From positions 124,001 through 188,000 of IMG/VR virus record IMGVR_UViG_3300035703_000005: 64,000 nt of DNA; one strand, given 5' to 3'. The position numbers and the translations under genes are program-made. This document shows positions 1 to 38,814 of this stretch, piece after piece (within the stretch, counting starts at the first letter, position 1; each line of letters begins with the position of its first letter). Under the pieces are notes generated by a model that had not been told where the DNA came from, made no database searches, and saw nothing but the letters and a program-made list of their open reading frames with translations.

Positions 1-1370
1 AGAATTTTAGCAGCCTTTACTCTAGTTGCACCACGAACTCTCTCAGCTTTCTCAGTCGCAGTTAAACCTTTTTTTGGATTTTCTTCAGTTTTTTTTGGCT
101 TTTTTTCAGTTTTTTTTGGCTTTTTTTCATCATCACCATCACCACGAATATCCGCAAGAAGATCATCTAACTTTCCCTCAGACAATGGAGAGAATTCCAA
201 AATCATTTTTTGAACTAAAGAAACTTTCTCTTTAACTTCTTCTTTCTTTTTTTCAGGAAGACCTTCATGTTTTGTCTTTGCAAAGTCTCTTGCTGCCTTC
301 TTGCTCATACCTTCAGCAGCCTTTGCAACCTCAGGAGATGCAGGAGTTCCTCCCTTCTTTGCAGCATAAACCATTCCCATAAATCTTTGTTGCGCTCTAC
401 TTAAAGCCTTTTCTTCAATGTATTCTTCCTTAGTAAGTTCTCCAGTTGCTTTTGCTTTACGAATCTTCTTTGGATTCTTTAACTTACCGCCTGGATACAT
501 ATCCTCTTCATCGTCACGATCATAGTCAGGATCCACATTCGCACGATGTCTTGCTGCTCTCTCTGGAGATGCCTTATCGTCATGAATACCTGATCTACGA
601 AGAGGTGAAGTCTTTTCTGCTTCTCTCTTATCCTTTTGCTTTTGACGACTACGGTTCTTCTTGAAGTCCTTCATCGTCATGCCTTCTTCAACCATTTCAC
701 CTTCTAGATCATAAGATTGACGAAGTTGTTTCATTGCATCATTCAATGCATTATTTCTCTTCTGCATTCCATATGCAGCACCTGCAATACCTGTTCCAGG
801 ATTCTTGATATTTTGGCCTTTATTTGCAGCACTTACACCAGAGTCTGCAGCTTTTTTCGCTCTATTAATAGCTGCACCAGCAAGTGCAGCACCACCAGCA
901 GCAAGCCCAGCAGCAACTAATGGTGCAATTTCATCAAGTTGTTCAGTTTCTTCCTTCATCTTTTCACGTTTTGCCTTTGTCTTAGCAAGAAGTCTTTCAC
1001 GAGCAGCTTCCTGTTCAGACTTAGAAATATTAAACATATCCCTATCGGTTTTAAGTCTCTCCTGGGGAGGAATAACTTTAGCTCTAACTTTTCTACGATT
1101 TAGAAGATACTTATCTGACTTATCGTGATCTCCGTCGTTATCAATATCCTTATCTTCCTTACCAACAGGATCTAAAGCTTCTTCTACCTTCTTCTTTTTA
1201 TCGGCAGCAATCTCGGCACCGACAATCGCTCTCCTCTTCTTTAAATAACTATCGGAAGAATCCGAATCACCATCATTATCCACATCGTCATCTTCTTGAC
1301 CGATAGGATCTAGTTTTTTAGGTGTTTTAGCTTCTGCAACAATACGTGAAAATTCTTCCCAACTAGCCAT
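1..1370 (-). CDS. Modular charged protein, putative internal (capsid-packaged) polyprotein; 3' end outside window; not in ORF track
   Basis: Manual translation from ATG at 1370 is open to the window edge (MASWEEFSRIVAEAKTPKKLDPIGQEDDDVDNDGD...KALSRAQQRFMGMVYAAKKG...). Late promoter ATAAATA at 1397-1403. Confidence 0.85.
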   Translation of the reverse strand, partial: MASWEEFSRIVAEAKTPKKLDPIGQEDDDVDNDGDSDSSDSYLKKRRAIVGAEIAADKKKKVEEALDPVGKEDKDIDNDGDHDKSDKYLLNRRKVRAKVIPPQERLKTDRDMFNISKSEQEAARERLLAKTKAKREKMKEETEQLDEIAPLVAAGLAAGGAALAGAAINRAKKAADSGVSAANKGQNIKNPGTGIAGAAYGMQKRNNALNDAMKQLRQSYDLEGEMVEEGMTMKDFKKNRSRQKQKDKREAEKTSPLRRSGIHDDKASPERAARHRANVDPDYDRDDEEDMYPGGKLKNPKKIRKAKATGELTKEEYIEEKALSRAQQRFMGMVYAAKKGGTPASPEVAKAAEGMSKKAARDFAKTKHEGLPEKKKEEVKEKVSLVQKMILEFSPLSEGKLDDLLADIRGDGDDEKKPKKTEKKPKKTEENPKKGLTATEKAERVRGATRVKAAKI

Positions 1371-1395: not shown

Positions 1396-2652
1396 TTATT
1401 TATTCTTTTTGCCCTTGCGGAATTTATCATAAATTGAAGTAATCTTAACTCCAGTATAACTCTTAACTTCTTGACCTGGAGTTAATGATTGAACATATTC
1501 CCTATATTCATCTGTTCCAATTTCGTGAGGATTCTCTACAAGATCTTTCAACCATGACTTAAACATTACGTCATCTTCAGTTACACAAATGACATAATTT
1601 GTTCCTCTACGAATTACCTCTCCTCTGAGTCCGGTATTCATATTTTCAACAAGATTACCAACCTCATAGATATGATCTACAAGATATGCATCTCTCATAC
1701 CTTCCTCATCGAGTTTAGGAGCTATTTCCCATACTTCAGTTCCTTCTTCAATATTCATAGATCTACGAAGGACATTAAATAATTCCTTTTTCTGCATATT
1801 ACCAAGAGTATCTGGAACACCCTTAGCAAATTTTACAAAATCTCCTTCTGCAGCCGCAAGTCTCAACTTAGATGCAGACATTCCAGTTACATCATCCGAA
1901 TCAGGATCTCTTTCTCCAGCAGAAACTACTTCAAGTTGATCATAGTTATAAAGCTCTCCATTATACTTATGACTTAAACCTTGAAATTCACCAAGTCTAT
2001 CTTGACCAACCATAATGATCATATTACTATGACCCTCTTCATTTGCGCCAGTCAATACATTGAAAATCGTCTTCGCGCCCTTATCATCAACAATACTATC
2101 CGCATAGTCTGGGAACATTTGACGCATATAAGAAATCTTCATTTGTGGAGTGAGAGGATTCTTCTTAGCGTCTTGTGAACGAGATGGATAAATTCTCAAT
2201 TCATAACCCCTCTTCTCAGCTTCCTTTGCAGCTCTCTTGAGAAGTTTTTCGTGGCCAATTGTAGGTGGATTAAATCTACCAAATACTACAACGACTCCTG
2301 GTGTTTCTGGAACTGGTTTTTCGACAGAAGGTTGTTCTTGTGAAGTTTGTTGTTCTGGTGGAACTTGTTGTTGTGTAGTTTGTTGGGTAGGTTCTTGAGT
2401 AGGAGCCTGTTGTGTTTGTGGTGCAGCTTGTGGTTGAACTGCTGCAGATTGAGGTTTAGAAGGTGAATCCTTTTGTCCAGGTATATTGTCACTACCAAAA
2501 AACTTTAATTTTCCAGATACAGTCTTAGCAACAAACTCACCATTTTTATCATACCATCCTCCATGACCGTCTCCACTCAAACCGAGTCTTTTGGCTTCGG
2601 CAGATGCAGAGGTCTCTCTAGCTTCAGTGAAAAACTGAGTGAAATTCTTCAT
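1396..2652 (-). CDS. Cytidyltransferase-like (HIGH-motif) nucleotidyltransferase
   Basis: VVVFGRFNPPTIGH, VGQDR and MSASKLR motifs; a typical cyanomyovirus gene near mazG; Q/P-rich linker after the N-terminal domain. Confidence 0.85.
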   Translation of the reverse strand: MKNFTQFFTEARETSASAEAKRLGLSGDGHGGWYDKNGEFVAKTVSGKLKFFGSDNIPGQKDSPSKPQSAAVQPQAAPQTQQAPTQEPTQQTTQQQVPPEQQTSQEQPSVEKPVPETPGVVVVFGRFNPPTIGHEKLLKRAAKEAEKRGYELRIYPSRSQDAKKNPLTPQMKISYMRQMFPDYADSIVDDKGAKTIFNVLTGANEEGHSNMIIMVGQDRLGEFQGLSHKYNGELYNYDQLEVVSAGERDPDSDDVTGMSASKLRLAAAEGDFVKFAKGVPDTLGNMQKKELFNVLRRSMNIEEGTEVWEIAPKLDEEGMRDAYLVDHIYEVGNLVENMNTGLRGEVIRRGTNYVICVTEDDVMFKSWLKDLVENPHEIGTDEYREYVQSLTPGQEVKSYTGVKITSIYDKFRKGKKNK

Positions 2653-2693: not shown

Positions 2694-3770
2694 TTATTTT
2701 TCTTTTGGATTGTATGCGGCAGGACCAGCTTCAACATAGAACTTCAATTCCTTAATTTGAAAATCTTCTCCAGATCCAACAACCCTTTTCTTAAATCTCA
2801 GTTGAAATAATTCTTTATTCAATGGTTTTATAATAAATTTTAAGTTATCACTAGTTTTCTGAACATCTATTGAGTTAGTATTTTTCTGAAGTTCATTTAT
2901 ATAATCTGGGGTAATTTCTTTTATTTTTGCCTTGTCAATATCTACAACATTTGCAAGATCGGATCCGAAAGTTACGGATTTAAATAACTCAAATGCCTGA
3001 TCTTTGAAGGAAGAATTTCTAGAAGCAGTTTCTAAAGATTCCAAAGTTTCCTTGTAAAGTTCTTTTATGGTATCTACTTTTAATTTTTTTTCTGCGGGAG
3101 TTCTAGCTTGTGCAAGTTGTTCCCCCAATATTTTTCTATACTTAGCTTCTTCAGGCAATGAAATTCCAAATCTTTTAAGTATATCCATCATTCCATTATA
3201 GGGACTCAAATTAGCAAGAGTTTTACTACCAGATTTCAAAGAGAAACTTAAAGTCCTATCCATTTGTTTTTGACCATTCATAGTTACCGAAACTTCAAGA
3301 TCTCCCTTAATATCTCCACCTGAAGATTCTCCGGCAATACCATCGGCATTAATAATAATTTCAACTTGATCAGATTTATTATTTTTTAAATAACTATCTT
3401 TAGTTTTTTGAATAAGAGTCCTATAGTGTGTTTTAGTGTACAGAATTAAATTATCTATTTTTCTTTCAATATTACCTATATCAGCACTCTTTGCGTAAAG
3501 AGGTTCATAATTTGGACCAAAAGCCATATTAGTTGATTCATATTTTAGTCTAACAATTAATACAACTTTAATTTTATCTTGTGGTTTTCCGTCTTTAAAT
3601 TCTCTAATTACTATTTTTGCATTTCCATTTCTAAAAATAGATGGATCAATTTGTCTCCTCCATTTATTAATATTTCCTTTATTGATTGTCCCACCACCAC
3701 TGGCAAATAACTCCGCAAGACATATGGCAAAGATGCCTTCCATTACATCCCCTTCATTTAACTTTGCCAT
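2694..3770 (-). CDS. Hypothetical protein, possible PD-(D/E)XK nuclease fold
   Basis: 358-aa ORF; KGDLEV...SFSLKSG resembles a restriction-like active site; late promoter at 3795-3801. Confidence 0.5.
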   Translation of the reverse strand: MAKLNEGDVMEGIFAICLAELFASGGGTINKGNINKWRRQIDPSIFRNGNAKIVIREFKDGKPQDKIKVVLIVRLKYESTNMAFGPNYEPLYAKSADIGNIERKIDNLILYTKTHYRTLIQKTKDSYLKNNKSDQVEIIINADGIAGESSGGDIKGDLEVSVTMNGQKQMDRTLSFSLKSGSKTLANLSPYNGMMDILKRFGISLPEEAKYRKILGEQLAQARTPAEKKLKVDTIKELYKETLESLETASRNSSFKDQAFELFKSVTFGSDLANVVDIDKAKIKEITPDYINELQKNTNSIDVQKTSDNLKFIIKPLNKELFQLRFKKRVVGSGEDFQIKELKFYVEAGPAAYNPKEK

Positions 3771-10907: not shown

Positions 10908-11072
10908 TTATGCGCCGTCTCCACCAGCACTTGAAGAAGATCTCTTAGCACATGCTTTGCCCCCAGGTGCCATGGCATACTTAATTACTTTATAGCACTT
11001 TACTTTAGGTTTAGGAGCAGGTGATCCGAAATCTCCTTCCGCTTCGGACATAAATTGCTTAAAGGATTTCAT
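10908..11072 (-). CDS. 54-aa protein with T4-like capsid-targeting N-terminus, not in ORF track
   Basis: MKSFKQFMSEAEGDFGSPAPKPKVKCYKVIKYAMAPGGKACAKRSSSSAGGDGA; overlaps the hsp20 3' end; AAGGTG upstream. Confidence 0.7.
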   Translation of the reverse strand: MKSFKQFMSEAEGDFGSPAPKPKVKCYKVIKYAMAPGGKACAKRSSSSAGGDGA

Positions 11073-18190: not shown

Positions 18191-19045
18191 TCAGTCTCTT
18201 GCCGAGTGCATCATTTCTTCGCCGCGTTTTTTATCTTCACGGCGTTTTGCTACCTTTTGTGCAGGAGAAACTGCAGGTGCTTCTGGTTTTACTTTACCAG
18301 TGCGATCTTTTTTCTTTCCTCTTTCTTGAATTGCTCCACCAGCACCCATTCTACCAGCACCCATAACCTTGTGCATGTGTCTCATGACTTTTGAGTCAAG
18401 GTCATCGCCGCCCATGGTGCCACCTTTAACTACTGGTTTTCCAGTTTTATAATCCTTACCAGTTTTTTTCTCATAACGATTAAGTTCCATAATATCCTCA
18501 AACCAGGCTTCACTCATGTTGAGAATAATTTTATCGGCAGCTTCTTCAGTTGAAGCAAAACCTTCATCAAGAAGATAGGAAAAAACTAACTCATAAGCAT
18601 TAAAACTTTCAGCACTTACACCAGTTTTCTTCTGTCTTTCTGCCTTTTTACCTTTTGGTTTTCCACCAGAATCACTTGGACCACCATCAAAGTCTGGATC
18701 ATAACCAGTATGTCCGTATTCCGCCTCACCTCTTGCGTGATCTCTATCACTTTGAGTCATTCCACTTCTTCTACCTGAATAGGGAGAAGGTTTAGTTGAC
18801 TTCTTACCTCTATTTCCCGCATCAGGATTAAGAGTTCTGTAGTGGTGTTTTTCTGCAGATTTTACTTTTGCAGTCTTTTCACCTCTTTTTGAAAATCCAC
18901 TTGCAGGAGTAGATCTTCTCTTATTAGCAAGGGAACCATAAGCAGCAGTTGCTTTTGGAGTTTGTCCATAAGAACCTTCTGCTTCATCAAGTTGACCAAC
19001 CTGACTATAAGCTTCTTGCAATCCCTGTAAATGTTCTGCGTCCAT
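18191..19045 (-). CDS. Basic modular late protein (MDAxxLxxLQEAY family), paralogue 1
   Basis: Start set at MDAEHLQ after CTAAATA (19065-19071); shares the YLLDEGFA...NMSEAW module with 21406..21981. Confidence 0.8.
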   Translation of the reverse strand: MDAEHLQGLQEAYSQVGQLDEAEGSYGQTPKATAAYGSLANKRRSTPASGFSKRGEKTAKVKSAEKHHYRTLNPDAGNRGKKSTKPSPYSGRRSGMTQSDRDHARGEAEYGHTGYDPDFDGGPSDSGGKPKGKKAERQKKTGVSAESFNAYELVFSYLLDEGFASTEEAADKIILNMSEAWFEDIMELNRYEKKTGKDYKTGKPVVKGGTMGGDDLDSKVMRHMHKVMGAGRMGAGGAIQERGKKKDRTGKVKPEAPAVSPAQKVAKRREDKKRGEEMMHSARD

Positions 19046-21405: not shown

Positions 21406-21981
21406 TTACCAATTATCCTGAAGTTCATTACTTCTAGGTCTTCCCGCATCTCTTTTACGTCCTCCTGTTCGTCTATTATCGTCCTCTTTTCTTTGAGATC
21501 TATTAGGATTATGAGCATCAGCAACCTTGCCCATTTTTGCAACTCGTTTTGGATTGCTATGCCTTGCAGATTGGTTTATCATTTTGCCTACAGGAAGTTT
21601 TTTATATCCTTCATCAACAATCTCTTCTCTCCACTCCTCACTCATATTTACCATAATTACTTGTGCTGCTTCTGGTGTTTCGGCATATCCTTCATCAAGA
21701 AGATGTGAGAGAATGATATCGTAGTAATCATAACTATCAGATACAGCAATACGACTATCCTTTACTTCTTTACCTGCTCTTCTTCTTGCTCTATTACCAG
21801 AACCAACATCTTCTGGTTTTTGTCTTTTACGAGCACTAAGTTTTCTAAGAGTTTCAACATCTCTTAGTTTTCTATCAAGTAAATCAGATGCCTTTTGTTT
21901 GCGAGCACCAGTAAGTTCTTCATCAACCTGATGAACTTGATTATATGCTTCTTGAAGATTGCAAAGTTCTTGTGCGTCCAT
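21406..21981 (-). CDS. Basic modular late protein (MDAxxLxxLQEAY family), paralogue 2
   Basis: MDAQELCNLQEAYNQV; YDIILSHLLDEGYAETPEAAQVIMVNMSEEW; TATAAATA at 22002-22009. Confidence 0.8.
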   Translation of the reverse strand: MDAQELCNLQEAYNQVHQVDEELTGARKQKASDLLDRKLRDVETLRKLSARKRQKPEDVGSGNRARRRAGKEVKDSRIAVSDSYDYYDIILSHLLDEGYAETPEAAQVIMVNMSEEWREEIVDEGYKKLPVGKMINQSARHSNPKRVAKMGKVADAHNPNRSQRKEDDNRRTGGRKRDAGRPRSNELQDNW

Positions 21982-29897: not shown

Positions 29898-29924
29898 GGT
29901 GTTTTATTTTTATTTATTTGCAAT

Positions 29925-29971: not shown

Positions 29972-31366
29972 TCACATTAAGTTGGAGACCTTTACTCTTC
30001 TGTAGTAACGGTTTGCATTGAGGCGTAGTCTGCCAAGACCCTGATCGGTTCCTTCTGCAAATGGGTTTGCAACGATTCCGTAACGAGTCTTGAATCCGAT
30101 TTTTGGCTGGAAGGTGTCCTGACCAACGGCACGAACCATCTGGAGAGGAACATATGGGCAGTAGAAGATACCAGCATCGTATGCGCTAGAACCCTTATAA
30201 CCTACAACGTAGTACTGATCAGCAGCAACGTTTGCAGCATATGGGTCAATGTATACACGATACTTACCTTGGAGAACACCAGCGAAGGTGTTACCAGTGT
30301 CATCAACGTTTAGGTTAGCGTTGAGTGCAGGGGTGTAATCAAGAACACCAGCCATGGTTAGAGCGGAAGCAACGTCTGCGGAGCAGATGATGGTATTGCC
30401 CTTTCCTCTACGAGTTCTTTGTGCGATTGCGTTAGCATCACGCTCGATCTGGAAAAGTAGACCCTTGAACTTCTCAACGGACCAACGACCATTGGAGTCA
30501 ACGTCGAGGTCAAATACACCAGCGGTAGCAGTGTTAACAGCAGCACCTTGCTCAGCAACCTTATAGATGGTTCTGATGACTTCTCTGTTGATTTCAGCGA
30601 GGATCTCAGTGGAGAGAATGTTAGCAAGTTCTGCTTCTGCGTTTAGACCGTGGATTGCCTTGAGGTCTTGAGCGAGCTCTAGGGAGTACTCAGCCTTGAG
30701 GGCACGTGACTTAGCAGTTACGGTAACTTTCTCGATGCTGAATGCCATCTGGTTGAAGGCATTAGATGCAGAATCTCCAAGAGCTTCTGAATCACCAGTA
30801 GCCATACCCTGACCAACATTATATGGTGATGGGTTGGTGGTTGCAGATCCAACTGGGTTGAGAACGTTAGGATTGGTTCCATCCTGGTTGGTTGTACCGA
30901 AACCAACGAGACCATCGGAGAATCCGTTGGCAAGGTTACGGCTGTTGTTCTGACCAGAGAAGGTGGTATCTACTTCATCGAAGAAGGTCTCAGTACCAGA
31001 CTGAGAATCGTAACGGGAACGCATTGCGAAGATGAGTCCAGTAGGACCACTCATTGGCTGAACACCACAGATGTCATAAGCAATGAGGTTAGGCATTGCA
31101 CGACGAATGAGGCTGATTAGAACTGGGTCGAAACCAGCAACAGGTCCACCAGCAGTAGCGGAACCAGAGAAACCACCAGTACCAGCAGAGTTAACTGGGG
31201 AAGCTTCGCCAAGGAACTCAGCAGACTCGCGTAGTTCTCTCTCTTGGTTCTCTAGAAGTTGTGCAGTTACTGCACGTCTGTGGGAATCTTTGATGTCGCC
31301 TAGACCGTCGAAGTCTAGAACTGGAGCCCACTTCTCCATTAACATTTGTGAGTTAATTCCGTCCAT
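29972..31366 (-). CDS. gp23: Major capsid protein (gp23)
   Basis: GVQPMSGPTGLIFAMR, KSRALKAEY, YCPYVPL, GFKTRYG. Confidence 0.99.
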   Translation of the reverse strand: MDGINSQMLMEKWAPVLDFDGLGDIKDSHRRAVTAQLLENQERELRESAEFLGEASPVNSAGTGGFSGSATAGGPVAGFDPVLISLIRRAMPNLIAYDICGVQPMSGPTGLIFAMRSRYDSQSGTETFFDEVDTTFSGQNNSRNLANGFSDGLVGFGTTNQDGTNPNVLNPVGSATTNPSPYNVGQGMATGDSEALGDSASNAFNQMAFSIEKVTVTAKSRALKAEYSLELAQDLKAIHGLNAEAELANILSTEILAEINREVIRTIYKVAEQGAAVNTATAGVFDLDVDSNGRWSVEKFKGLLFQIERDANAIAQRTRRGKGNTIICSADVASALTMAGVLDYTPALNANLNVDDTGNTFAGVLQGKYRVYIDPYAANVAADQYYVVGYKGSSAYDAGIFYCPYVPLQMVRAVGQDTFQPKIGFKTRYGIVANPFAEGTDQGLGRLRLNANRYYRRVKVSNLM

Positions 31367-32599: not shown

Positions 32600-32646
32600 T
32601 TGTACTCTCCGATTACCTTTGTATAATCTGTATTTATTTATTAAAA

Positions 32647-33297
32647 TTAAAGATTTGATAAAAACTCTTGGAACAGATTTAATTTCTGTTCATCAAGTCT
32701 TCTTTGATCAACAAGAGTGTTAATTCTCTTTTGAGTATTGGAAGCAAGTTGTTCACGAAGAATTCCTCCTTCCCAAACCCACTCCTTTCCTTCCATAATT
32801 CCAGATACAAATGCATCAGGAGCTGAAGGATCAGCAACAATATCTGCAGCAGTTGCAAGCATAAAATCTTCACCAACTACTTTATAACCTTCATTAGTTG
32901 TAGTTAATGAACCTACACCACGAGAAGAAACTCCTAACATTACACCTTCATCAAGAAGAGAAGATGCAATTTTGCCCATTGGAGTATTAAGAATCTGAGC
33001 TTTACCTACAAAGTTATTTCCCTCTTGAACAAGAGAAGTAATTTTGTGAGAAACACGATCGAGATTAACTGTTGGTCCATCTGGATGACCAAGCTCTCCG
33101 AGAGCACGACCCTTCGCAACAAAACTTTCATTATAACGATTTACTTCACGAGTAAGGGTTGTAATAGGATACATTCTTCCATTACGATTTTTAATTTCGC
33201 CTTGGAGAAATACTCCTTCAATATAAAGTTTTTTATCAGCACCTTTTCCTTCGGTGATAATCTTTACATTTGTTACTTCTTCGGTGATTAGTTTCAT
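32647..33297 (-). CDS. gp21: Prohead protease (gp21)
   Basis: NRNGRMYP, GELGHP, VSSRGVGS, DIVADPSAPDA. Confidence 0.97.
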   Translation of the reverse strand: MKLITEEVTNVKIITEGKGADKKLYIEGVFLQGEIKNRNGRMYPITTLTREVNRYNESFVAKGRALGELGHPDGPTVNLDRVSHKITSLVQEGNNFVGKAQILNTPMGKIASSLLDEGVMLGVSSRGVGSLTTTNEGYKVVGEDFMLATAADIVADPSAPDAFVSGIMEGKEWVWEGGILREQLASNTQKRINTLVDQRRLDEQKLNLFQEFLSNL

Positions 33298-33572: not shown

Positions 33573-33603
33573 TGTTATAATAAAGTTCTATAATAGTTAT
33601 TTA

Positions 33604-33807
33604 TTATTCCTCGTCTTCTCCATGAGAATCACTATATTCAACCTCAGATTCGGTTTCGGTATCTTGTTGCCCAAACATTGAAGCGGCAACCAAGGGTCTA
33701 ATAGTATCAATATTTTCTGCAGATTTTTGCATTAAAATTTCTTTAATTTTATCACTAATATCTGCAGGGGATTCGTTAGAAACCATCATGTTAATAAGAT
33801 CATCCAT
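33604..33807 (-). CDS. Small acidic prohead protein (gp67-like position)
   Basis: Follows the portal; late promoter at 33835-33841. Confidence 0.65.
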   Translation of the reverse strand: MDDLINMMVSNESPADISDKIKEILMQKSAENIDTIRPLVAASMFGQQDTETESEVEYSDSHGEDEE

Positions 33808-38730: not shown

Positions 38731-38814
38731 GTCTTTCCCTCTAAAGAAGATTCAACTTGACTACAAATATTTATTATTTGCTAACTTTACATTGGGGAAA
38801 CCGCCAATGAACCG

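What the first reader, a model, noticed from the sequence alone, without database searches (positions are those of the whole stretch)
1..1370. Missed gene with twin DxDxDG loops and a hydrophobic peptide behind a putative cleavage site
Seen: two copies of LDP(I/V)G.ED.D(V/I)DNDGD.D.SD.YL..RR, then LDE|IAPLVAAGLAAGGAALAGAAINRAKK, then VEE|GMTMKDFKK and IEE|KALSRAQQRFMGMV modules. DxDxDG is an established Ca-binding loop. Inference: cleavage after LDE would expose a Gly/Ala-rich hydrophobic N-terminus like a membrane-active or ejection-channel peptide.
Basis: partly seen in the sequence, partly recalled or inferred. Interest (0 to 1): 0.6.

Follow-up and report, generated by a model that had tools for sequence, protein, structure and literature searches.

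The report
Cyanophage capsid-packaged polyprotein with protease-cut modules
The region is the front end of a real 773-codon gene of a T4-like cyanophage.

Summary
Window 3..1370 holds only the first 456 codons of a 773-codon gene that runs off the window start. The gene is real: dN/dS is 0.05-0.11, more than 2,300 database relatives exist, and all listed ones that carry a source name are called "hypothetical protein". It was not missed by gene callers.

The host genome is a 249-kb T4-like cyanophage with psbA/psbD and a gp21 prohead protease 44% identical to T4's.

The N-terminus, MASWEEFSRIVAE|A, resembles the T4 capsid-targeting sequence (ipII/ipIII: MKTYQEFIAE|A). Neighbouring genes, including the NMNAT-like enzyme, carry closer copies (MKNFTQFFTE|A).

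The protein is a chain of cassette-like modules. In 119 relatives the residues before each module start are [ILVM]-x-E, the T4 gp21 cleavage motif:
- IAPL: 78/78
- GMxMKDF: 51/51
- DUF3008: 113/113
- background: 1.9%

Single modules also occur fused directly to a targeting tag. Three module homologues were detected by mass spectrometry in purified S-SCSM1 virions.

Best reading: an internal-head-protein polyprotein. The DxDxDG peptide is under extreme purifying selection but matches no calcium-binding family. A membrane role for the IAPL peptide is possible but untested.

The parts
3..1370 (-). First 456 codons of a 773-codon gene. The rest lies upstream of the window start, at G000 123049-124002.
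   Evidence: dN/dS 0.05-0.11; more than 2,300 relatives
1332..1370 (-). N-terminal leader MASWEEFSRIVAE|A, a variant of the T4 capsid-targeting sequence (aromatic at position 4, F at 7, then [IV]-x-E).
   Evidence: T4 ipII/ipIII MKTYQEFIAE|A and ipI MKTFKEF; the leader is conserved in orthologues; the roles of CTS residues 4, 7, 8 and 10 are given in PMC9026906
1230..1313 (-). DxDxDG module, copy 1 (aa 20-47)
1092..1175 (-). DxDxDG module, copy 2 (aa 66-93), preceded by VEE|A. The 28-aa peptide is letter-identical in 26 loci but encoded by 14 different DNA versions.
930..938 (-). LDE (aa 145-147), the predicted gp21-type cleavage site in front of the IAPL module
   Evidence: [IL]xE precedes IAPL in 8/8 and 78/78 relatives
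684..929 (-). IAPL module (aa 148-229). It has a hydrophobic Gly/Ala-rich head, IAPLVAAGLAAGGAALAGAAI (window 867-929), then a basic and polar tail, and ends in VEE.
411..683 (-). Basic GMTMKDF module (aa 230-320, net charge +5). In other phages it is a 94-aa protein made of a CTS plus this module alone.
   Evidence: L024, L032: MKTFQEFMVIAE|GMTMKDF...; junction 20/20 and 51/51
195..410 (-). DUF3008 module (aa 321-392, net charge +8), preceded by IEE|
   Evidence: Pfam PF11450 just under cut-off; PHROG hits; junction 21/21 and 113/113; 63% identical to S-SCSM1 virion protein gp279
1397..1404 (-). AATAAATA, a T4-late-promoter-like box 26 nt upstream of the ATG
   Evidence: all 12 copies in the window lie on the coding strand, several of them upstream of head and tail genes
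1396..2652 (-). Upstream neighbour: an NMNAT-like cytidylyltransferase that starts with a T4-type targeting leader, MKNFTQFFTE|A
   Evidence: the S-SCSM1 orthologue was detected in virions
32647..33297 (-). gp21 prohead protease (Peptidase_S77), the proposed processing enzyme
   Evidence: 44% identity to T4 gp21
29972..31366 (-). gp23 major capsid protein. Its propeptide ends in FLGE|A, matching T4's FLTE|A.
   Evidence: the 65-residue T4 propeptide is given in PMC9026906

Best explanation
The gene encodes an internal-head-protein polyprotein of a T4-like cyanophage.

Inferred course:
1. It is transcribed late, together with the structural genes.
2. The N-terminal leader MASWEEFSRIVAE acts like the T4 capsid-targeting sequence and takes the protein into the scaffolding core of the prohead.
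3. The gp21-type prohead protease then cuts after Glu in [I/L/V]-x-E. This removes the leader and separates the chain at each module border: after aa 13, 64, 147, 229, 320 and about 392, with further sites in the C-terminal half.
4. The products are pieces of about 50-90 residues. Two are acidic DxDxDG peptides, one has a newly exposed hydrophobic Gly/Ala-rich N-terminus, and several are strongly basic helical peptides (GMTMKDF, DUF3008, DUF6321).
5. The pieces stay with the packaged DNA and are probably delivered into the cell with it, as T4 IPI-III are.

Shown here: the motifs, the module and junction statistics, the presence of the protease, and purifying selection. Taken from the literature: virion detection of homologues and T4's cleavage rules. 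Inferred: targeting, the cleavage itself, the fate of the pieces, and any role after injection.
For: **Leader**
- T4 ipII/ipIII begin MKTYQEFIAE|A and ipI begins MKTFKEF.
- In this genome five ORF starts fit M-K-x-F-x-Q/E-F, against 0 for the reversed control pattern. Three of them are consecutive genes: the NMNAT-like gene, this gene and the next one.
- The conserved leader positions 4, 7, 8 and 10 are those that T4 genetics assigns to targeting (4, 7) and processing (8, 10) (PMC9026906).
- Among 69 NMNAT-like homologues, 53 carry the 10-residue leader, 4 more carry it behind a false upstream Met, and 12 start exactly at the residue after it. The leader therefore behaves as a detachable tag.

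**Protease and specificity**
- The genome has a Peptidase_S77 gp21 (E 3e-39) that is 44% identical to T4 gp21.
- T4 gp21 cuts after L/I-x-E.
- The gp23 propeptide here ends FLGE|A, where T4 has FLTE|A.

**Junctions**
- In alignment A1, modules come and go as cassettes whose ends coincide with [ILV]xE.
- In 50 IMG/VR relatives the triplet precedes IAPL 8/8, GMxMKDF 20/20, DUF3008 21/21, DKEYRR 5/5, MPYQV 4/4 and SAVPGKP 9/9. Background is 2.4%.
- In 119 further database relatives the counts are 78/78, 51/51, 113/113, 52/53 and 19/19, with xCGC 60/60. Background is 1.9%. The middle residue varies freely.
- 94-aa proteins exist that consist of a CTS plus a single module, MKTFQEFMVIAE|GMTMKDF....

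**Virion presence**
- S-SCSM1 gp279, gp029 and gp280 are annotated as virion proteins from mass spectrometry of CsCl-purified particles, as is its NMNAT (PMC9602691).
- They share modules with this protein at E 4e-22, 4e-21 and 6e-12.

**Late expression and selection**
- An AATAAATA box lies 26 nt upstream, as before head and tail genes.
- dN/dS is 0.05-0.11.
- An identical 28-aa peptide is encoded by 14 DNA versions.
Against: - No direct evidence exists for this phage. No RNA run holds the locus, and there is no proteome.
- This gene's own leader departs from the T4 form: A instead of K at position 2, W at position 4, and three extra residues.
- Several predicted sites have Val or Met at P3, whereas T4's stated rule is L/I.
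- The total number of [LIVM]xE strings is not above the composition expectation (17 vs 13.4).
- S-SCSM1 gp029 has no such leader yet is in the virion, so modules might enter by another route.
- In S-SCSM2R, 23 virion proteins were detected, of which one has unknown function. I could not find out whether it is the orthologue ORF176.
- Tryptic mass spectrometry shows presence, not processing.
Confidence: 0.68

Rival explanations
1. Prohead core or scaffold accessory, like T4 gp22, gp67 and gp68. It would be targeted and cut in the same way, but the pieces would serve head assembly or size determination and mostly leave the head before DNA packaging. They would not be delivered to the host.
For: In T4, the core proteins gp22, gp67 and gp68 are the ones cut into multiple fragments. 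T4 gp67 has an acidic D/E-rich tail and gp68 a basic tail, as the modules here do. The protein has a long K/E-rich helical stretch (aa 440-530) and no globular fold.
Against: The gene lies far from the head-gene block, which has its own gp22 and a small ORF in the gp67/68 position. Module homologues were detected in mature purified virions, so at least some pieces remain inside. Single modules with a CTS look like T4 IPs, not scaffolds.
Confidence: 0.14
2. One reading: the biologically important product is the IAPL peptide. Once freed by cleavage after LDE, its Gly/Ala-rich hydrophobic N-terminus would insert into the host membrane as a pore, pilot or channel for DNA entry. The twin DxDxDG loops would act as Ca-binding regulators.
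For: After [IL]xE the module always starts with IAPL (8/8 and 78/78). It is a 21-residue segment with a Kyte-Doolittle mean of 1.74, followed by NRAKK. The DxDxDGxxDxxD pattern is kept under extreme purifying selection.
Against: Orthologues L011 and L012 lack this IAPL module at this position. The second copies in L007 and L011 carry several Arg residues and are far less hydrophobic. No match was found to any membrane-protein family or Ca-binding family. Myoviruses already have tail-borne membrane-penetration parts (general knowledge). The peptide is only one of about ten modules.
Confidence: 0.2
3. An uncut, intrinsically disordered multi-module protein, for example an internal DNA-condensing protein or a cytoplasmic host-takeover protein. 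Under this reading the [ILV]xE strings would be linker or helix-cap features kept for reasons other than proteolysis.
For: Confidence is low and no compact fold appears in either AF2 model. The overall count of [LIVM]xE is near expectation. The complex prediction with gp21 gave no answer, which is neither for nor against.
Against: The junction triplet is kept whichever modules are neighbours, while its middle residue varies. The same border is used where a module is fused straight to a CTS. P1 is always Glu, as in T4 substrates.
Confidence: 0.1

Closest known systems
[quoted passage not shown]
   Same: A short N-terminal leader with an aromatic residue at position 4 and Phe at 7, ending in [I/L/V]-x-E followed by Ala. 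The proteins are small, mostly basic and poorly conserved in their mature parts. The genes are variable and cassette-like. A gp21-type protease is present in the same genome. Homologues are found in virions.
   Different: About ten modules are strung on one chain behind a single leader, instead of one leader per small protein. The leader of this gene is a 13-residue variant (MASWEEFSRIVAE). None of the modules resembles a T4 IP in sequence. The host is a cyanobacterium.
T4 prohead core proteins gp22, gp67 and gp68
   Same: Cut at several L/I-x-E sites into small acidic and basic peptides.
   Different: Not encoded in the head-gene block. No sequence similarity. Homologues persist in mature virions.
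Ejection (E) proteins of giant phages such as SPN3US and phiKZ, which carry propeptides removed by the prohead protease
   Same: Head-internal proteins that are processed after Glu by a gp21-related protease and delivered to the cell (titles and abstracts of PMC7411985 and PMC10052503).
   Different: Those are large folded proteins with one propeptide each, not chains of mini-modules. No sequence relationship was tested.
DxDxDG calcium-binding loops (EF-hand-like loops, thrombospondin type-3 repeats)
   Same: The strings DVDNDGDSDSSD and DIDNDGDHDKSD fit DxDxDGxxDxxD. Each loop is followed by a predicted helix.
   Different: PROSITE PS00018 fails because position 8 is not hydrophobic. There is no Pfam EF-hand or TSP_3 hit. 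The loops lack the Cys and Pro of TSP-3 and have no entering helix.
Pfam DUF3008 (PF11450) and DUF6321 (PF19846)
   Same: aa 322-375 matches DUF3008 at 22.4 bits (cut-off 24). aa 696-770 matches DUF6321 at 56 bits (cut-off 28.5).
   Different: Both families have no known function. Here they appear as protease-delimited modules of a virion protein, which suggests a context for them.

Membership tests
T4-type CTS-bearing internal head proteins | N-terminal capsid-targeting sequence: about 10 residues with an aromatic at position 4 and Phe at 7 | tested here: inconclusive
   This gene has the variant MASWEEFSRIVAE (W4, F7, three extra residues, no K2). Its neighbours have the canonical form: MKNFTQFFTE, MKSFKQFLSE.
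T4-type CTS-bearing internal head proteins | The leader ends in an L/I-x-E cleavage motif | tested here: met
   VAE|A here, and IAE|A, LAE|A, VTE|A or LLE|A in orthologues. Met at motif level only.
T4-type CTS-bearing internal head proteins | The phage encodes a gp21-type (Peptidase_S77) prohead protease | tested here: met
   Window 32647-33297(-), E 3e-39, 44% identical to T4 gp21.
T4-type CTS-bearing internal head proteins | The protein is present inside mature virions | not testable with these tools
   Evidence comes from homologues only: S-SCSM1 gp279, gp280, gp029 and NMNAT gp281 were detected by mass spectrometry.
T4-type CTS-bearing internal head proteins | Actual cleavage by the prohead protease and ejection into the host | not testable with these tools
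   The complex prediction with gp21 gave no answer. No proteomic data exist for this phage.
EF-hand / DxDxDG calcium-binding domains | DxDxDG core motif | tested here: met
   Two copies, at aa 29-34 and 75-80.
EF-hand / DxDxDG calcium-binding domains | Match to a curated EF-hand or TSP-3 signature (PROSITE PS00018, Pfam) | tested here: not met
   The PS00018 regex gives no match. Pfam gives no family at E<=10 for aa 14-100. PDB sequence search gives nothing meaningful.
EF-hand / DxDxDG calcium-binding domains | Binds Ca2+ | not testable with these tools
   Needs ITC, 45Ca overlay or a structure.
Pfam DUF6321 (PF19846) | Score over the gathering cut-off | tested here: met
   56 bits against a cut-off of 28.5, aa 696-770. 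This part lies outside the window.
Pfam DUF3008 (PF11450) | Score over the gathering cut-off | tested here: not met
   22.4 bits against a cut-off of 24. However, PHROG families covering the same module score E 1e-22 to 1e-23.

The most novel reading that the evidence does not exclude
T4-like cyanophages may run a general 'address tag plus protease' delivery system. A T4-type capsid-targeting leader, and at least two further leader types, would load a shuffled repertoire of mini-modules and even enzymes (the NMNAT-like cytidylyltransferase) into the head. gp21 would release them, and they would be injected with the DNA as a ready-made host-takeover or counter-defence cocktail.

Within it:
- The letter-invariant 28-residue DxDxDG peptide would be a metal-dependent switch or an adaptor to a conserved partner.
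- The IAPL peptide would be a maturation-exposed membrane-active peptide.

This would also explain the repeated but unexplained finding of NMNAT in cyanophage virions.
Probability: 0.3. Interest if true: 0.8.

Novelty: new variant of a known kind. Interest (0 to 1): 0.62.

Why it matters
Capsid-targeting tags and internal proteins are well worked out for T4 and its coliphage relatives. In the searchable literature I found no paper that links them to cyanophages.

If the reading is right, it would:
1. Give a function context to a very large family of unnamed marine and freshwater phage proteins (more than 2,300 relatives, every source name given being "hypothetical") and to two Pfam DUFs.
2. 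Explain how non-structural proteins such as NMNAT end up in cyanophage virions, which authors have reported without a mechanism (PMC9602691).
3. Show a polyprotein solution in which one tag carries many protease-delimited modules that are exchanged like cassettes.
4. Offer a simple sequence rule (leader plus [ILV]xE junctions) for predicting injected proteins in abundant ocean and lake phages.

Tried and rejected
- **Pfam on single modules:** the DxDxDG region, the IAPL module and the GMTMKDF module gave nothing at E<=10.
- **PDB sequence searches:** the whole protein and three modules gave nothing meaningful.
- **ESM Atlas look-alikes of the IAPL module:** scores were 0.81-0.82, below the level that means anything.
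- **AF2 models:** aa 1-232 gave pLDDT 56 and pTM 0.15. aa 230-400 gave pLDDT 66 and pTM 0.27. Both show helices and loops with no compact fold. I therefore ran no fold search, because matches to such models would be meaningless.
- **Complex prediction of gp21 with aa 1-64:** no answer, score 0.00. This counts neither for nor against binding.
- **Sequencing runs:** only DNA holders were found (source: a subsurface metagenome; small shares in freshwater metagenomes) and no RNA run, so expression could not be tested.
- **Virion protein list of S-SCSM2R:** the supplementary list is not held, so I could not see whether orthologue ORF176 was detected.
- **tblastn of aa 146-325 against isolate phages:** no match.
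- **The search of protein representatives:** not used, because relatives were plentiful.
- **Ideas considered and rejected:**
  - A secreted Ca-binding protein. There is no signal peptide, and the leader is CTS-like.
  - Conservation of the 28-mer through a DNA-level element or recent transfer. Synonymous sites differ at almost every codon.
Full report
**1. What is there**

The window is bases 124001-188000 of a 248,835-bp virus record. The record has psbA and psbD, a T4-type major capsid protein, a portal, a scaffold and a prohead protease. Its closest isolates are T4-like cyanomyoviruses.

It is open at its 3' end, and the complete gene is G000 123049-125370, 773 codons.
- Two 28-residue DxDxDG repeats, aa 20-47 and 66-93, identical at 18 of 28 positions.
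- LDE|IAPLVAAGLAAGGAALAGAAINRAKK, aa 145-173.
- VEE|GMTMKDFKK, from aa 227.
- IEE|KALSRAQQRFMGMV, from aa 318.

The gene is real:
- dN/dS against four orthologues is 0.05-0.11 over aa 1-139.
- More than 2,300 proteins in the large collection match at E<=1e-5. Every source name among the 120 listed is "hypothetical protein".
- The exact sequence is already in that collection and in the ESM Atlas, so it is not a gene that callers miss.

**2. Families**

Pfam sees DUF6321 at the C-terminus (56 bits) and DUF3008 just under its cut-off at aa 322-375. PHROGs gives 15 partial hits. Fourteen are to families of unknown function, each covering one or two modules. The fifteenth is a weak hit (E 7e-4) to a cytidyltransferase family that covers the first DxDxDG module. 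The DxDxDG, IAPL and GMTMKDF parts match no Pfam family even at E<=10, and nothing is found in the PDB by sequence.

**3. Modular build**

Aligning seven full-length orthologues from IMG/VR shows modules present or absent as clean cassettes. The borders of these cassettes fall on [ILV]-x-E:
- LDE/IDE/IAE/IQE before IAPL
- VEE/LDE/IEE/VDE before GM(T/S)MKDF
- IEE/LAE/LSE/ISE before the DUF3008 start
- VEE/VDE before DKEYRR
- IEE/LDE before MPYQV

I counted this in two sets of relatives:

| Module | 50 unique IMG/VR ORFs | 119 database relatives |
|---|---|---|
| IAPL | 8/8 | 78/78 |
| GMxMKDF | 20/20 | 51/51 |
| DUF3008 | 21/21 | 113/113 |
| DKEYRR | 5/5 | 52/53 |
| MPYQV | 4/4 | 19/19 |
| SAVPGKP | 9/9 | 3/3 |
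| xCGC | 7/9 | 60/60 |
| [AG]LDPVG | not counted in this form | 64/71 |
| Background per position | 2.4% | 1.9% |

The middle residue varies (D, E, Q, A, S, L, T), the first alternates among I, L, V and M, and the last is always Glu.

The total number of such triplets in this protein (17) is close to what composition predicts (13.4). The signal is therefore their placement and conservation, not their number.

**4. The key to the motif**

T4's prohead protease gp21 cuts after Glu in L/I-x-E. T4 loads its internal proteins into the prohead through a 10-residue N-terminal capsid-targeting sequence (CTS), which gp21 then removes. Residues 4 and 7 of the CTS matter for targeting, and residues 8 and 10 for processing (PMC9026906).

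From the T4 record itself, ipII and ipIII start MKTYQEFIAE|A and ipI starts MKTFKEF.

This gene starts MASWEEFSRIVAE|A. In this genome only a handful of ORFs start in the T4 manner (the reversed-pattern control gave 0):
- MKNFTQFFTE|A: the NMNAT-like gene immediately upstream, window 1396-2652.
- MKSFKQFLSE|S: the 104-aa gene immediately downstream.
- MKSFKQFMSE|A: window 10908-11072.
- MKTFKQFLHE|A: G000 221169-221726.

Among 69 NMNAT-like homologues, 53 carry the leader, 4 more have it behind a false upstream Met, and 12 begin exactly at the residue that follows it. The 10 residues therefore behave as a detachable tag. The conserved positions (F4, F7, L/I/F8, E10) are the ones T4 genetics singles out.

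The protease needed is present: window 32647-33297, Peptidase_S77, 44% identical to T4 gp21. The capsid protein's propeptide ends FLGE|A where T4 has FLTE|A.

Single modules of this protein also occur elsewhere as small proteins made of a CTS fused directly to the module at the same border, for example the 94-aa MKTFQEFMVIAE|GMTMKDF.... That is the architecture of a T4 IP.

**5. Independent experimental support from the literature**

In Synechococcus phage S-SCSM1 the syntenic block reads: virion protein, NMNAT (virion protein), virion protein gp280, virion protein gp279. The labels come from mass spectrometry of CsCl-purified particles (PMC9602691).

Module matches to this protein:
- gp279 is a stand-alone DUF3008 module (63% identity, E 4e-22).
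- gp029 ends in the DUF6321 module (55%, E 4e-21).
- gp280 holds the DxDxDG and following modules (66%, E 6e-12).

The authors note that NMNAT-like proteins turn up repeatedly in cyanophage virions and offer no mechanism. Its S-SCSM1 copy starts MKSFLQFLKE|A.

I found no paper in the library that connects a CTS with cyanophages.

**6. Expression**

No RNA run holds the locus. An AATAAATA box lies 26 nt before the ATG and another lies before the NMNAT-like gene. All 12 copies in the window are on the coding strand, and several sit before head and tail genes. This fits the T4-type late promoter TATAAATA, which I cite from my own knowledge. The overall count is not above chance, so it is only a hint.

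**7. The individual pieces**

With the conserved sites, the in-window part gives these pieces:

| Residues | Content | Net charge |
|---|---|---|
| 1-13 | leader | -2 |
| 14-64 | DxDxDG copy 1 | -3 |
| 65-147 | DxDxDG copy 2 plus helix | 0 |
| 148-229 | IAPL module | +2 |
| 230-320 | GMTMKDF module | +5 |
| 321-392 | DUF3008 module | +8 |

These sizes are in the range of T4 IPI and IPII.

AF2 gives no compact fold. For aa 1-232, pLDDT is 56 and pTM 0.15; the loops are coil, each followed by a helix. For aa 230-400, pLDDT is 66 and pTM 0.27; only the first helix of GMTMKDF and three short DUF3008 helices are confident.

The second DxDxDG peptide is remarkable. The identical 28 residues occur in 26 loci, encoded by 14 DNA versions with 84% mean nucleotide identity and synonymous differences at almost every codon. 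That degree of constraint points to a precise interaction, with a metal and/or a conserved partner. However, the peptide fails PROSITE EF-hand and has no family match, so calcium binding stays a motif-level inference.

The IAPL head is the only strongly hydrophobic stretch and would become a free N-terminus. A membrane role is possible, but:
- Two orthologues lack the module at this place.
- The second copies in L007 and L011 are arginine-rich.
- No tool gave support.

**8. Verdict**

The most likely mechanism is a T4-type internal-head-protein polyprotein (confidence about 0.68). The main rival is a scaffold-like core protein whose pieces leave the head. The Ca-binding and membrane-activity parts are open.

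It is a new variant of a known kind: many modules behind one tag, in cyanophages, where the tag system seems not to have been described.

Noticed in passing
window 1396-2652 (-): The NMNAT-like cytidylyltransferase starts with a near-canonical T4 capsid-targeting leader, MKNFTQFFTE|A. 57 of 69 homologues have the leader, and 12 start exactly one residue after it. This could explain the published but unexplained detection of NMNAT in cyanophage virions, and it suggests an injected enzyme.
   Followed up: partly
G000 122735-123049 (-), just outside the window; window 10908-11072 (-); G000 221169-221726 (-); G000 about 3133-3345 (-): Further small ORFs start with the same leader: MKSFKQFLSE (104 aa, phrog_1742), MKSFKQFMSE (54 aa), MKTFKQFLHE (185 aa, very basic) and MKGFSEF (71 aa). 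They are candidate internal head proteins.
   Followed up: partly
window 21406-21981 (-) and 18191-19045 (-); S-SCSM1 gp089 and gp280 (L087): Two other conserved N-terminal leader types also end in [ILV]xE and sit on MS-detected virion proteins of S-SCSM1. They are MS(T/I)NPLNDIS(K/R)VYLEQV.E| and M..Q.L..LQEAY..V...(L/V).E|. The window has two ORFs with the second type. These may be alternative targeting tags.
   Followed up: no
L087 5464-5673 (S-SCSM1 gp279); L046 2293-2745: DUF3008 mini-proteins end in a CTS-like tail (...KKRTFKEFLEYIE*, ...MSFKDFMKIMGDILGEWEK*). gp279 has no N-terminal leader, whereas L046 also starts MKPFKQFREE. The tag may therefore also work from the C-terminus.
   Followed up: no
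window, 12 sites, e.g. 1397-1404, 2688-2695, 29911-29918, 32631-32642, 33598-33605, 38768-38775: All 12 copies of AATAAATA lie on the minus (coding) strand. Several lie shortly upstream of head and tail genes (gp22, tail sheath and others), as a T4-type late promoter would. The overall count is not above chance (12 vs 10.4).
   Followed up: partly
T4 record NC_000866, 18966-19130 (L089): T4 gp61.1, a 54-aa hypothetical protein next to the primase gene, starts MKTFKEFIKE. This is a CTS-like leader on a protein not listed among the T4 internal proteins.
   Followed up: no
window about 41523 (-), 731-aa ORF: This ORF contains the CYxKVKSRYxVWPSAYASGALVKCRK module. The same module sits beside DUF6321 in the virion proteins S-SCSM1 gp029 and S-RIM2 SWTG_00073. 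It is another member of the shuffled module pool.
   Followed up: no
whole record G000: The only run holding the locus nearly in full is labelled a subsurface metagenome. Small shares occur in many freshwater, pond, wetland and wastewater metagenomes. The genome nevertheless has psbA and psbD, so it is probably a freshwater cyanomyovirus of 249 kb.
   Followed up: partly
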